Positions 1 to 8,011 of a DNA stretch of 64,000 nucleotides are shown here, piece after piece. Numbering within the stretch: position 1 is the stretch's first letter; each line of letters starts with the position of its first letter. Source of the DNA: Fimbriosthenelais zetlandica. Its lineage: Eukaryota. Location of the stretch: the NCBI GenBank assembly GCA_977030845.1, contig OZ365110.1, positions 35,216,001 through 35,280,000 of the forward strand. Reading direction: 5' to 3'. The notes below the pieces were generated by a model, which was given only the letters and a program-made list of their open reading frames with translations, was not told the origin of the DNA and did no database searches. A program made the translations under genes and the position numbers.

Positions 1-112
1 GTTCTTGCCATATTGTTCATTCGACCTTTTCATCAAGCCTCCCCAGGGAGCTGGAAGCATGAACTTGTAATCAGCTCTTTTTTTGTGACCCCATTGTCCG
101 GGTATGGAATAG
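1..112 (-). CDS. AKH/GnRH-like precursor gene D, coding exon 2 (runs off the window edge): (S)YSIPGQWGHKKRADYKFMLPAPWGGLMKRSNEQYGKN...
   Basis: Minus-strand acceptor ctattccatttcAG at 114-113, then an open frame to base 1. Spliced in phase 2 to exon 769-848 it gives QFSYSIPGQWGH-KKR-ADYKFMLPAPWGGLM-KR, collinear with the two-peptide layout of genes A and C. Confidence 0.88.
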
Positions 113-768
113 CTGAAATGGAATAGCGATCCTGTCAAACTATAACAAAGAACTGGCCAGCTATACTGGCCTCGCTCACTTTTTACTCCATAACAACTGC
201 ACTGCGAAGGCCGCAGTCCAGTCTGAATGTGATAAAACTCCTTATGACCTCCGAGTTGATAGGATAAAATGCGTTAGAAGGTATGTAATTCCGTGATAAA
301 AAATATCGTGAGGAGCCTCTACTGCTTTGGTGGTCAAGCCTCAAGACTCTTGGCACAGGTAGGCTGAGCCACGAATTTGGAAGGAAGTCATTGAAGCACG
401 ACTGATTTTAATTGGGGTGATTGGATGTCGAGGCAATCATAGTGGATTAGACTCGGACTTGAGTGTTTCCCTACTATTCTTAGAGCGGAAGGTGGATAGT
501 GTCGTGTATAAACGGGGTCAACACACTTGAGCTTTTCTTTTAGTTGTTTTGGGAAAACAACTGAGAAAAGCTCTCATGTGTTAACCCATAATTGACCTAG
601 CATAATATATTGTATGTCTGAAGAATTTGAGCTTCATTCGAAATAAAATAATAATGAGAAAATAATGTACAAATTGCTATATTCATGGGATAATATTTGT
701 AATTTTAACATTATAACAGAAAGAAATGGCTAATATTGAAGTCAAAGGAAAATGAAATTAAATCCCAC

Positions 769-848
769 CTGAATTGTGCGTCGGTACCTTGTAACTTGTA
801 AGCTAGGGCAATGCAGAGCACTAAAAGAACCAAAGTTGAGTTTTCCAT
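769..848 (-). CDS. AKH/GnRH-like precursor gene D, coding exon 1: signal peptide plus first residues of peptide 1 (MENSTLVLLVLCIALAYKLQGTDA|QF-)
   Basis: ATG at 848-846, hydrophobic signal-like stretch ending T-D-A before Gln. Donor AG|GTGGGA at 769/768. Upstream acceptor ttttattatttAG at 872-871. Confidence 0.85.
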
Positions 849-1019
849 TCCTTCAGCGAAACTAATGCGCCTAAATAATAAAATAGCATGTACATAATAA
901 CAAGGATACGGATGCATGTAAATACTATAATGAGTTATTAAGCCTATGCATCCCTATTTATAATTAAAACGGTATTAACCATGTAATGAATACAGAGATC
1001 TCGTTGGATTAACACTTAC

Positions 1020-1104
1020 CTAATAAACTTTGGGCACTGGATCTATATACTCACAACCTTACTTTTCATATGAACGCCCAACAAGCTGTTCGTCTTTTTA
1101 AATA
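1020..1104 (-). promoter_or_regulatory. Candidate core promoter and non-coding first exon of gene D
   Basis: TATTTAAAAA at 1104-1095 (minus) and donor G|GTAAGT at 1020/1019. Alternative donors lie at about 1034 and 1043, so the exon end is uncertain. Confidence 0.4.
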
Positions 1105-3632: not shown

Positions 3633-3854
3633 ATGAACAAGCTCTTCGTTTTCCTGCTTTTGGCCGCACTAATGGTCATCCACTGTAGCGCCAACCAATT
3701 CAGCTTCTCTCTACCCGGTAGCTGGGGTCAAACAGGCAAAAGGTCATTCAGCTTCGCCCTTCCTGGCAAGTGGGGAAATGTGAAGAGAGGAGGAAAGTTT
3801 GACTGCAGCGATCTCAATGAAGAAACGGTTCTGGCAATTTACAAATCTATCCAT
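3633..3854 (+). CDS. Akh: AKH/GnRH-like precursor gene A, coding exon 1: signal peptide, (N)QFSFSLPGSWGQT-GKR, SFSFALPGKWGNV-KR, start of Cys-containing associated peptide
   Basis: Signal peptide, Gln-initiated FSFSLPGxWG peptide with a GKR amidation/cleavage site, a second copy ending in KR, and donor CAT|GTAAGT after 3854 (74 codons, phase 0). Confidence 0.92.
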
Positions 3855-4117: not shown

Positions 4118-4189
4118 GAGGAAACAGCTCGTCTCAACTTCTGCTTCAATGAGGCAATGAAACTGGGGGAATCTACCAGCAAGCAATAA
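4118..4189 (+). CDS. Akh: Gene A coding exon 2: EETARLNFCFNEAMKLGESTSKQ*
   Basis: Acceptor ttctcgttccAG at 4116-4117. Phase-0 frame contains the ExxRLxxC motif typical of AKH/GnRH-associated peptides. Stop TAA at 4187-4189. Confidence 0.9.
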   Translation, partial: EETARLNFCFNEAMKLGESTSKQ

Positions 4190-5218: not shown

Positions 5219-5404
5219 ATGAAGAATATATTCCTCTTCTTAGCAGTTATTGCCTTAGGGTTGACAACTTATGGACATCGCATCAAGTTTAAAAAGGATA
5301 GGTCCATTCTACCAGATACAGGGAAAAGTTATGAGAAAAAGTCTCATGGTCAGTGCTCAGATATTGACAGGAAAATAGTTATAGACCTTTATCTGACACT
5401 TCAG
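5219..5404 (+). CDS. Divergent AKH/GnRH-like precursor paralogue B, coding exon 1: MKNIFLFLAVIALGLTTYG|HRIKFKKDRSILPDTGKSYEKKSHGQCSDIDRKIVIDLYLTLQ
   Basis: Signal peptide. CSDID...LYLTLQ aligns with CSDLN...IYKSIH (A) and CNDLD...IYKTIQ (C). Donor CAG|GTGAGT after 5404, phase 0, at the same position as in A and C. Confidence 0.85.
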
Positions 5405-5619: not shown

Positions 5620-5694
5620 CAAGAAGCCTGGAGGATTCAAAATTGCATGATGGATGTAACTAACTACGTGCACGAGGAAGCAGGACGTGCTTAG
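5620..5694 (+). CDS. Gene B coding exon 2: QEAWRIQNCMMDVTNYVHEEAGRA*
   Basis: Acceptor ttttgcacatcacAG at 5618-5619. QEAWRIQNC aligns with QEAVRIVSC (C) and EETARLNFC (A). Stop TAG at 5692-5694. Confidence 0.85.
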   Translation, partial: QEAWRIQNCMMDVTNYVHEEAGRA

Positions 5695-5776: not shown

Positions 5777-6694
5777 GGGTGTAACACTTTACAACTGAAT
5801 TATTATTAATATTTGCATTTAGTTTGAGCAGAAAAAATATTTTTACGGGAAAGTAACGTGGGTGGGTAGTGCCTATATACAATCTGTCCAAACAAGTTGA
5901 TCCGAAACTACCATACATATACATGTACATGTATTTGTACTGTGTAAGTTTGGACAGACTGTGTCGAGTTCCCTAAACATTCTTCCTCGGAATAACAAAT
6001 TGATAATAAACTCAGAATTAGACCTACCTATCTTGAGTTACAACAAATTTTAATGCTAATTAAAATTGGCACAGAAACATAAGGGCTGTTTAAATACGCA
6101 ATCAGCATCTGAATATTTCAGTGACTCTTCCTCTGCTTGGAGGCAGTTTCCAATCTGCGTTTTTATATTATATAAGATTGAAAAGTCCTATACAATCCTT
6201 TATGATGTCTATTACAACAGTTCCCCAGTAAACACCCTCTCTTGAGTGACATATGCCTCAAATGAAACATCCGCTCGTAAAGCTCACTCTTTTCGATGGC
6301 CCAGCCAGTCTCTGGCTAGGCAGGTGGATATTTCTTTGCGCATATCCGAGAAACAAACAACAAGAAAAATGGCTGACGTCCGCAAACGCTCTATAGCAAC
6401 GTCCAGTATGGTTTTGTCCGGCGGTCAACCACCTCTATGGGGCTCAGCGACCCACGTTCCTTTCTATTGTTGCGAAATCGCGAGCGGCATTTTCAGCAGA
6501 AAGGCTCAGGGAAAGACCGGACATAGAGGAAGGGAAGTTTAGGACTTTCCGGATGCTGAAGTCCTCTATTGTACCATATTGTCCACTAAGCTTCAAGTGA
6601 GGATAGGAAGTGTGGGAGCTCTGTGTTGTCATGTCACATGACGTAGGGTGTGTGACGTGTTGGACGTATGATAAGGTTGAGTTAGAGAGTGGGG

Positions 6695-7467: not shown

Positions 7468-7683
7468 ATGAATAAGGCCCTTATTATCTTGGTGGCTGCC
7501 GCCGTGCTTGCATTCCAATGCTCTCAGGCTCAGTTCTCCTTCTCCTTGCCTGGAAACTGGGGTAATGGTAAACGCGCCTTTAACTTCGCTCTGCCTGGCA
7601 GATGGGGAAATGTGAAGAGGAACAGTGTCAAGTGTAATGACCTAGACCGGGATACAGTAATGAACATCTATAAAACTATTCAG
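7468..7683 (+). CDS. Akh: AKH/GnRH-like precursor gene C, coding exon 1: signal peptide, QFSFSLPGNWGN-GKR, AFNFALPGRWGNV-KR, start of associated peptide
   Basis: Signal peptide ending S-Q-A directly before Gln, GKR site, second copy ending in KR, and donor CAG|GTATGT after 7683 (72 codons, phase 0). From memory, the predicted pQFSFSLPGNWGN-amide differs by one residue from the annelid pQFSFSLPGKWGN-amide (not database-checked). Confidence 0.93.
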
Positions 7684-7939: not shown

Positions 7940-8011
7940 CAAGAGGCAGTCCGGATTGTAAGCTGTTTCGGTGAGGCAGAATCGCAAGATGTGGAAAAGG
8001 ACAAACATTGA
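7940..8011 (+). CDS. Akh: Gene C coding exon 2: QEAVRIVSCFGEAESQDVEKDKH*
   Basis: Acceptor atttttcAG at 7938-7939. Gives the same C-x24-C spacing as A and B. Stop TGA at 8009-8011. Confidence 0.9.
   Translation, partial: QEAVRIVSCFGEAESQDVEKDKH

What the first reader, a model, noticed from the sequence alone, without database searches (positions are those of the whole stretch)
1..870. Hidden fourth paralogue D, with a phase-2 intron inside the mature peptide
Seen: the ORF track reads through the intron (QFRWDLIS...). Splicing AG|GTGGGA (769/768) to tttcAG|C (113/112) rebuilds a Ser codon and yields signal-QFSYSIPGQWGH-KKR-ADYKFMLPAPWGGLM-KR-SNEQYGKN. The 656-bp intron lies in codon 3 of the hormone, and A and C have no intron there. 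Inference: either D gained the intron or it keeps an ancestral intron lost before the A/B/C duplications, which would polarise the history of the cluster. Automated annotation would probably miss this gene.
Basis: partly seen in the sequence, partly recalled or inferred. Interest (0 to 1): 0.8.

Follow-up and report, generated by a model that had tools for sequence, protein, structure and literature searches.

The report
Conserved split-hormone AKH/GnRH-like gene
A fourth, divergent copy of an annelid AKH/GnRH-like neuropeptide gene sits at the window's left edge, and a distant species has the same intron at the same spot inside the hormone-coding codons, so the gene is very likely real, though no RNA data could be found.

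Summary
On the minus strand, exon 848-769 encodes a signal peptide plus Gln-Phe and ends AG|GTGGGA. A 656-bp GT-AG interval (768-113) follows. Exon 112-1 then rebuilds Ser and reads YSIPGQWGH-KKR-ADYKFMLPAPWGGLM-KR-SNEQYGKN before running off the window.

No sequencing run could be listed, so junction reads could not be checked. The window's left flank could not be fetched either.

The main evidence is comparative. A search with exon 2 found one orthologue in a deeply diverged species (ENA assembly ERZ25767047, two contigs). Its signal exon ends CAG ATC AG|GTAAGG. After 2.66 kb comes ccttccag|T TTC TCG..., giving QISFSLPGKWGH-KR. This is the same phase-2 intron in the Ser3 codon. The Gly needed for amidation is also missing, and the gene is intact with the expected C-x24-C tail.

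Synonymous sites between the two genes are saturated while dN is about 0.27. The two genes form a clade (98-100% support).

D is therefore an old paralogue lineage rather than a recent sibling of A/B/C, and the intron marks that lineage. Intron-less relatives and outgroups favour a gain. Paralvinella has a different hormone-splitting intron. The scan also noted this stretch from an overlapping window.

The parts
769..848 (-). Coding part of the signal-peptide exon of gene D: MENSTLVLLVLCIALAYKLQGTDA | Q F + AG (first two bases of the Ser3 codon), followed by the donor AG|GTGGGA at 769/768
   Evidence: It is 62.5% identical over 32 aa to exon 1 of the Paralvinella gene (E 9e-11) and 68% over 25 aa to exon 1 of the D-type orthologue in L003/L004 (E 5e-8).
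849..870 (-). Probable 5' untranslated start of the same exon, preceded by an acceptor-like ttattatttag at 880-871. This suggests a leader intron as in paralogues A and C. Inferred only.
   Evidence: Acceptor-like sites also lie just upstream of the ATG in A and C and in L003 (ttctgtcag|AGGTCAACATG). There is no transcript evidence.
113..768 (-). 656-bp GT...AG intron, phase 2, inside codon 3 (Ser) of the predicted hormone. It has a pyrimidine-rich 3' end (ctattccatttcag) and a possible branch site (tttgac) about 25 nt upstream.
   Evidence: The same position and phase occur in the orthologue (2662 bp in L003, 2705 bp in L004). No other copy of the interval is in the window or the fetched loci. 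No terminal inverted repeats.
1..112 (-). First 112 bases of the peptide exon: (S)YSIPGQWGH-KKR, ADYKFMLPAPWGGLM-KR, SNEQYGKN..., open to the window edge
   Evidence: phmmer with this piece finds only the D-type orthologue ORFs P0008 and P0009 as true relatives (E 2e-7 and 1e-6 against 1.84 billion proteins).
515..587 (-). 73-nt near-perfect hairpin inside the intron. Its meaning is unknown and it is not required by the gene model.
   Evidence: -42 kcal/mol, z -8.7 on the sense strand. No Rfam match. Not conserved in L003/L004.

Best explanation
Gene D is a real member of the annelid FSFSLPG-type AKH/GnRH-like preprohormone family (Capitella GnRH-2/-3, Platynereis proto-AKH-1 = GnRHL3). It belongs to an old, divergent paralogue lineage, called D-type here.

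Transcription runs on the minus strand. One exon encodes the signal peptide plus Gln-Phe and two bases of Ser. A 656-bp phase-2 intron is then removed. The next exon supplies the rest of the hormone, a K-K-R site, a second related peptide and a K-R site.

Signal peptidase would expose Gln1, which can cyclise to pyroglutamate. Prohormone convertase and carboxypeptidase would release pQFSYSIPGQWGH with a free, non-amidated C-terminus, and ADYKFMLPAPWGGLM.

Shown here: the sequence anatomy, the homology, the conserved intron position and phase in a second species, and protein-level constraint between the two species. Inferred: that the intron is spliced in this animal, the processing steps, the leader exon, and that the gene continues left of the window into a Cys-containing tail as its orthologue does. 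The intron was most likely gained once on the D-type stem, after that lineage split from the intron-less canonical genes.
For: (1) Removing exactly 113-768 restores QFSYSIPGQWG, colinear with QFSFSLPG.WG in A and C and with canonical GT and AG.
(2) Orthologue in ENA assembly ERZ25767047, on two contigs (L003, L004). Exon 1, MQNTTLLLLVLGVVLAYRLQGADAQI+AG|GTAAGG, lies 2.66 kb upstream of ccttccag|T TTC TCG CTG CCC GGC AAA TGG GGC CAC AAA CGG. The intron is at the same codon and phase, and there is likewise no Gly before the basic site.
(3) The orthologue splices by homology into an intact 125-aa precursor with three peptides, the family's phase-0 intron and a C-x24-C tail, in both contigs.
(4) D versus orthologue: 34/64 residues identical, pS 0.93 (saturated), dN 0.27 over codons 1-56, GC3 0.48 versus 0.77. 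No nucleotide-level alignment survives even in exons. The shared reading frame, dibasic sites and splice sites have therefore been kept by selection.
(5) D and the orthologue form a clade with 100/99 and 98/92 support. AU rejects grouping D with A and C to the exclusion of the orthologue (p 0.002).
(6) D's signal peptide is closer to the canonical annelid genes (Paralvinella 62.5%) than those of A and C are.
(7) Family relatives P0003 and P0004 pass Pfam PF06377 Adipokin_hormo (28.9 and 24.7 bits against a cut-off of 22.9).
(8) Intron-less hormone exons occur in window A and C, L001 and the metagenome contig L005. Li et al. 2016 report a single shared phase-0 intron in Capitella, oyster and most insect genes.
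Against: There is no transcript evidence of any kind. No sequencing run could be listed for this stretch. No spliced D protein is in the 5.8-billion-protein collection, but the spliced product of the plainly functional paralogue A is absent too, so that blank means little.

Only 64 codons of D are visible. The Cys-containing tail, the next intron and the stop codon lie outside the window, so a disabling change downstream cannot be excluded.

D lacks the amidation Gly that nearly all AKH/GnRH-type hormones have. After the second KR it shows SNEQYGKN where the orthologue has a third, amidated peptide.

The donor GTGGGA is not the strongest type. Only one orthologous species was found, and a metagenome scan found none. 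The orthologue's own splice is also inferred from homology, not from RNA.
Confidence: 0.8

Rival explanations
1. The intron is ancestral to the whole FSFSLPG-type family (or older). D-type genes retained it, and the canonical lineage, including A/B/C, lost it.
For: If D-type is sister to all canonical genes (midpoint-rooted tree), one loss is as parsimonious within the family as one gain. Another family member, Paralvinella, also has an intron inside the hormone. The placement of D-type within the family is unresolved (AU p 0.086 and 0.29).
Against: The Paralvinella intron is at a different site and phase: Gly8, phase 1, 22 nt after the start of the Gln codon, against 8 nt in D. Li et al. 2016 describe the Capitella, oyster, insect AKH and corazonin genes as sharing only the phase-0 intron in the associated peptide, and show human GnRH for comparison. 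That leaves no outgroup support for an old intron at Ser3.
Confidence: 0.15
2. In this genome D is a decaying or dead copy. Its lineage was functional, but the local copy is no longer expressed or is disrupted outside the window. In the extreme form, the 656 bp is an insertion that merely looks like an intron.
For: The amidation Gly is lost. The region after the second KR does not match the orthologue's third peptide. The gene cannot be followed past the window edge. There is no RNA evidence. The eight bases before the donor (CAATTCAG) and before the acceptor boundary (CATTTCAG) agree at 7 of 8 positions, which could be read as a target-site duplication.
Against: The ATG, signal peptide, both splice sites, both basic cleavage sites and all 64 visible codons are intact. 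The missing Gly is shared with the intact orthologue, so it is a lineage trait and not local decay. The interval sits exactly where the orthologue has its intron, has no terminal inverted repeats and has no other copy in 64 kb. The 7-of-8 match is largely what the consensus acceptor TTTCAG and a Phe-Ser(AG) exon end produce, and it is absent in the orthologue.
Confidence: 0.1
3. Chance: two unrelated short ORFs that happen to resemble a signal peptide and a peptide repeat.
For: The pieces are short (26 and 37 codons).
Against: Exon 1 gives E 9e-11 to Paralvinella and 5e-8 to L003. Exon 2 gives E 8e-8 to paralogue A and 2e-7 against 1.84 billion proteins. Order, strand, frame and splice sites are all correct.
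Confidence: 0.01

Closest known systems
Annelid FSFSLPG-type AKH/GnRH-like preprohormones: Capitella teleta GnRH-2 and GnRH-3, and Platynereis dumerilii proto-AKH-1 (= AKH1 = GnRHL3). Sources: Li et al. 2016, PMC5024129; Andreatta et al. 2019, PMC6969523.
   Same: A signal peptide is followed directly by Gln. The hormone core is Q-[FI]-S-[FY]-S-[LI]-P-G-x-W-G, followed by a basic cleavage site. A second related peptide sits on the same precursor, as in Capitella GnRH-2, Paralvinella, P0002 and P0003. In the orthologue there is an associated peptide with two Cys and the family's phase-0 intron.
   Different: There is no Gly before the basic site (WGH-KKR, and WGH-KR in the orthologue), so the peptide cannot be amidated. 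The second peptide has a [YF]KF[MA]LP core and a hydrophobic two-residue tail. An extra phase-2 intron splits codon 3 of the hormone. None of the published annelid sequences read is of this type. Platynereis GnRHL3 activates the corazonin receptor only at higher concentration; nothing is known for D-type peptides.
Paralvinella palmiformis LSH36_23g08083 (P0004; locus L002)
   Same: It is a family member that passes Pfam PF06377. Its signal peptide is very like D's. It also has an intron inside the hormone-coding segment, in addition to the phase-0 intron.
   Different: Its intron is 200 bp, phase 1, in the Gly8 codon (CCA G|GTTAGT...GATAG|GC). That is 14 nt downstream of the D-type site. Its peptides keep the amidation Gly.
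Nematode AKH-GnRH-like peptides
   Same: They are members of the same superfamily that lack C-terminal amidation (stated in Li et al. 2016).
   Different: They differ in phylum, peptide length and motif. There is no evidence of common descent of the non-amidated state.

Membership tests
AKH/GnRH-superfamily preprohormone, annelid FSFSLPG (GnRHL3/proto-AKH-1) type | N-terminal signal peptide with the predicted cleavage site directly before Gln (future pyroglutamate) | tested here: met
   The sequence is MENSTLVLLVLCIALAYKLQGTDA|QF, with small residues at -3 and -1. It aligns with the signal peptides of Paralvinella, Capitella and the orthologue. No signal-peptide predictor was available, so this rests on the rule of thumb and the alignment.
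AKH/GnRH-superfamily preprohormone, annelid FSFSLPG (GnRHL3/proto-AKH-1) type | Hormone core Q-aromatic/aliphatic-S-[FY]-S-x-P-G-x-W-G | tested here: met
   The spliced product is QFSYSIPGQWG, against QFSFSLPG[KNS]WG in relatives. This depends on the inferred splice.
AKH/GnRH-superfamily preprohormone, annelid FSFSLPG (GnRHL3/proto-AKH-1) type | Gly amidation donor followed by a dibasic site (G-K-R) | tested here: not met
   D has WGH-KKR and the orthologue has WGH-KR. The basic site is present but Gly is absent. Canonical members have G-K-R.
AKH/GnRH-superfamily preprohormone, annelid FSFSLPG (GnRHL3/proto-AKH-1) type | Associated peptide with two Cys (C-x24-C here), interrupted by a phase-0 intron | not testable with these tools
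   It lies left of base 1 of the window, if present. It is met in paralogues A, B and C and in the D-type orthologue (exon 3 found by pattern and homology).
Pfam PF06377 Adipokin_hormo | Whole-protein score at or above the gathering cut-off (22.9 bits) | tested here: inconclusive
   The 64-aa D fragment and the orthologue's exon 2 give no match. A's first exon scores 14.7. Full-length relatives P0003 (28.9) and P0004 (24.7) pass, and their matches lie mainly over the associated peptide, which D's visible part lacks.
AKH/GnRH-superfamily preprohormone | The mature peptide activates a GnRH/AKH/corazonin-type receptor | not testable with these tools
   This needs a receptor assay. In Platynereis the canonical peptide GnRHL3 activates CrzR at higher concentration.
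Spliceosomal intron (as opposed to an insertion) | GT...AG borders, correct frame on removal, and position and phase conserved in an orthologue | tested here: met
   The junction is AG|GT...AG|C here and AG|GT...AG|T in L003/L004, both phase 2 in Ser3.
Spliceosomal intron (as opposed to an insertion) | Junction-spanning RNA reads | not testable with these tools

The most novel reading that the evidence does not exclude
D-type genes are a previously undescribed, conserved annelid neuropeptide lineage. Its first peptide is a non-amidated pQ[FI]S[FY]S[LI]PG.WGH, possibly with its own receptor preference. Its defining phase-2 intron is a datable intron gain inside a 12-residue hormone. Together with the separate Gly8 phase-1 intron in Paralvinella, this would mean two independent intron gains within 14 nt of each other, in a short pyrimidine-rich ...CAG-containing coding segment. 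That would be a small natural test case for proto-splice-site intron gain and a rare-genomic-change marker for annelid gene and species trees.
Probability: 0.3. Interest if true: 0.55.

Novelty: new member of a known kind. Interest (0 to 1): 0.4.

Why it matters
This adds a fourth, structurally distinct gene to the AKH/GnRH-like cluster. It shows that the cluster mixes an old paralogue with younger tandem copies. It also gives annotators a concrete three- or four-exon model that ORF-based or homology-only pipelines would break at the hormone.

For neuropeptide evolution, it provides a conserved non-amidated relative of the annelid GnRHL3/proto-AKH peptide, whose cognate receptor is still unclear in Platynereis. 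For intron evolution, it provides a conserved intron inside a mature peptide that relatives lack. It does not change the general picture of the GnRH superfamily.

Tried and rejected
- RNA evidence: two searches for sequencing runs holding window 1-900 (RNA, then any kind) listed none. Read laying could therefore not be used.
- Spliced D protein against the 5.8-billion-protein collection: no hit. This is uninformative because A's spliced product is also absent.
- Transposon or introner origin of the intron: there is no second copy in the 64-kb window or in five fetched loci, no terminal inverted repeats and no direct repeats. The 7-of-8 match between the exon end and the intron end is explained by the acceptor consensus and is absent in the orthologue. 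The idea was dropped.
- Intronic RNA gene: no Rfam match. The hairpin is not conserved.
- More D-type orthologues: a metagenome scan with D-type patterns found none. The other phmmer hits, P0005-P0007 and P0010, are unrelated repeat proteins.
- Conserved synteny: there is no canonical paralogue within 16.5 kb upstream of the orthologue and no other shared genes in the fetched loci.
- Left flank of the window: no tool could fetch it, and earlier notes of the scan gave only titles.
- Rooting and placing D-type within the family: about 105 columns are too few. Only the D+orthologue clade and the rejection of an A+C+D clade are solid.

Full report
**What is in the sequence**

On the minus strand an ATG at 848-846 opens MENSTLVLLVLCIALAYKLQGTDAQF. 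The exon ends ...CAA TTC AG at 769 and is followed by GTGGGA. Left unspliced, the frame runs into ...QFRWDLISFSFDFNISHFFLL and a stop; this is ORF 711-917.

At 113/112 a pyrimidine-rich tract ends in tttcag|C. Joining 769 to 112 makes AG+C = Ser. The product then reads YSIPGQWGH-KKR-ADYKFMLPAPWGGLM-KR-SNEQYGKN, open to base 1. The interval is 656 bp.

Three paralogues lie on the + strand:
- C: 3633-3854 plus 4118-4189.
- B: 5219-5404 plus 5620-5694. It has no recognisable hormone.
- A: 7468-7683 plus 7940-8011.

Each has one phase-0 intron in the associated peptide. A and C encode the signal peptide and both peptides in one uninterrupted exon.

**Which family this is**

The string FSFSLPG occurs in one paper of the library, Li et al. 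2016 (PMC5024129). That paper gives pQFSFSLPGKWGNamide as Capitella GnRH-2 and Platynereis proto-AKH-1. Its supplement lists the precursors.

A profile of A, C and D found four proteins:
- an A orthologue in a Logan assembly (P0001, 94% identical);
- a metagenome ORF (P0002);
- a Tara metatranscriptome protein (P0003);
- Paralvinella palmiformis LSH36_23g08083 (P0004).

P0003 and P0004 pass the Pfam cut-off for PF06377 Adipokin_hormo. In Platynereis this peptide was renamed GnRHL3. It activates the corazonin receptor only at higher concentration (PMC6969523).

**Direct evidence for splicing could not be obtained**

Two searches for public sequencing runs holding window 1-900 listed none, so no reads could be laid. 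The spliced D protein has no match among 5.8 billion predicted proteins. The spliced product of paralogue A is missing as well, so that blank carries no weight.

**Comparative evidence**

phmmer with D's exon-2 piece against 1.84 billion representative proteins returned two true relatives, P0008 and P0009 (E 2e-7 and 1e-6). The other hits are unrelated repeat proteins.

Both relatives are genomic ORFs from two Mb-sized contigs of one ENA assembly, ERZ25767047 (L003 and L004). They read from intron sequence into SFSLPGKWGH-KR-SGFKFALPGKWGSIL-KR-NSAFGFSLPGQWAG-KR-...C DVDTLSIVLQMYDFIK, followed by gtaggg.

tblastn with D's exon 1 found MQNTTLLLLVLGVVLAYRLQGADAQ about 2.7 kb upstream in both contigs (68% identical, E 5e-8). 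The DNA reads ...GCC CAG ATC AG|GTAAGG, and then ...ggttccttccag|T TTC TCG CTG CCC GGC AAA TGG GGC CAC AAA CGG.

This is an intron in phase 2 inside the Ser3 codon, exactly as in D. There is again no Gly before the basic site.

A last exon, (E/Q)RAPLLDRCVPHLGGDSSATDRN*, follows a strong acceptor in both contigs. It completes a 125-aa precursor with the family's C-x24-C spacing.

**Depth of divergence and constraint**

Between D and this orthologue, 34 of 64 residues are identical. Synonymous differences are saturated (pS 0.93) and dN is 0.27 over the first 56 codons. Third-position GC is 0.48 against 0.77.

No nucleotide alignment survives, not even in the exons. In sequence this diverged, chance would not keep the start codon, the signal peptide, GT and AG at the same codon position, the reading frame and the basic cleavage sites. 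The gene model, including the intron, has been under selection.

This covers the history of the lineage. It cannot exclude a very recent loss of function in this genome. However, no disabling change is seen in the 64 visible codons or at the splice sites.

**Place in the family**

In maximum-likelihood trees, D and the L003 gene form a clade with 100/99 support (8 sequences) and 98/92 support (14 sequences, including published Capitella, Platynereis and Helobdella precursors).

A tree that holds window A, C and D together without the L003 gene is rejected (AU p 0.002). A clade of A, C, D and the L003 gene is not rejected (p 0.086). A link of D-type to Capitella GnRH-3 is neither supported nor rejected (p 0.29).

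D is therefore an old paralogue that predates the split of the two species. It is not a recent product of the A/B/C duplications, although here it lies head to head with C, 2.8 kb away. In the other species no canonical paralogue lies within 16.5 kb upstream of the D-type gene.

**Gain or retention**

The hormone exon is uninterrupted in window A and C, in the A orthologue L001 and in the metagenome contig L005. Li et al. describe the Capitella, oyster and most insect genes as sharing only the phase-0 intron in the associated peptide. This favours a single gain on the D-type stem.

Paralvinella does have an intron inside the hormone, but at another site: 200 bp, phase 1, in the Gly8 codon, 14 nt downstream. 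I read that as a second, independent event and not as the same intron. Retention of an ancestral intron remains possible at about 15%.

**Origin of the intron**

The eight bases before the donor (CAATTCAG) and the last eight bases of the intron (CATTTCAG) agree at seven positions. That could suggest a target-site duplication. Against this:
- the match is what a consensus acceptor and a Phe-Ser exon end give;
- it is absent in the orthologue;
- the interval has no terminal inverted repeats;
- there is no other copy in the window or the fetched loci.

No mechanism of gain can be named.

**How it most likely works**

The signal peptide is removed before Gln1. The convertase cuts at KKR and KR, and carboxypeptidase trims the basic residues. 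This yields pQFSYSIPGQWGH with a free C-terminus and ADYKFMLPAPWGGLM. These steps follow from the established processing rules of the family and were not tested.

Both D-type genes lack the amidation Gly. The two differ by one residue at the site (KKR against KR), so a shared loss is likely but not proven. Li et al. note that nematode AKH-like peptides also lack amidation.

**Limits**

- There is no RNA evidence in either species.
- Only one orthologous species was found, and a metagenome scan found none.
- The position of D-type within the family is unresolved.

**Verdict**

The gene and its intron are well supported by conservation. The evolutionary reading needs the correction given above. 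D-type is a new, divergent member of a known neuropeptide family with two unusual but modest features. The same stretch was also noted by the scan from an overlapping window.

Noticed in passing
window 515-587 (inside the D intron): A 73-nt near-perfect hairpin: -42 kcal/mol, z -8.7 on the gene's sense strand, and -36.7 on the other strand. No Rfam match, no other copy in the window, and not conserved in the orthologue's intron. It could be a lineage-specific intronic small-RNA precursor or a palindromic remnant.
   Followed up: partly
L002 10095-10294 (Paralvinella palmiformis JAODUP010000023.1): The canonical Paralvinella gene has its own 200-bp intron inside the hormone, phase 1 in the Gly8 codon (CCA G|GTTAGT...GATAG|GC). 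This is 14 nt from the D-type site. It is a second, apparently independent hormone-splitting intron in this family.
   Followed up: partly
L003 10136-10183 and window 1-24: The D-type orthologue carries a third peptide, NSAFGFSLPGQWA, with a Gly-Lys-Arg amidation/cleavage signal. At the matching place D reads SNEQYGKN and then leaves the window. D may have lost this copy, or the orthologue may have gained it.
   Followed up: no
window 5219-5404 and 5620-5694: Paralogue B keeps the signal peptide, the phase-0 intron and the two Cys. It has no recognisable AKH-like peptide (HRIKFKKDRSILPDTGKSYEKK in its place).
   Followed up: no
window 6351-6422 versus L001 657-728: A 72-nt non-coding block about 1.05 kb upstream of A's start codon is 72% identical in a species where only exons otherwise align. 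It is a candidate regulatory element or leader exon of gene A.
   Followed up: no
L003 10277-12323 versus L004 10355-15208: The two contigs of the other species are identical in the D-type coding sequence except for three bases. They differ by a 2.8-kb indel in intron 2. They may be haplotypes or a very recent duplicate. A reverse-transcriptase ORF lies at L003 14866-16539.
   Followed up: no
window 871-1100 (minus strand): Upstream of D's coding exon there is an acceptor-like ttatttag (880-871), a strong donor-like TTATTAG|GTAAGT (1020/1019) and a TATTTAAAAA motif near 1090. Together these would fit a short non-coding leader exon, as in paralogue A.
   Followed up: no
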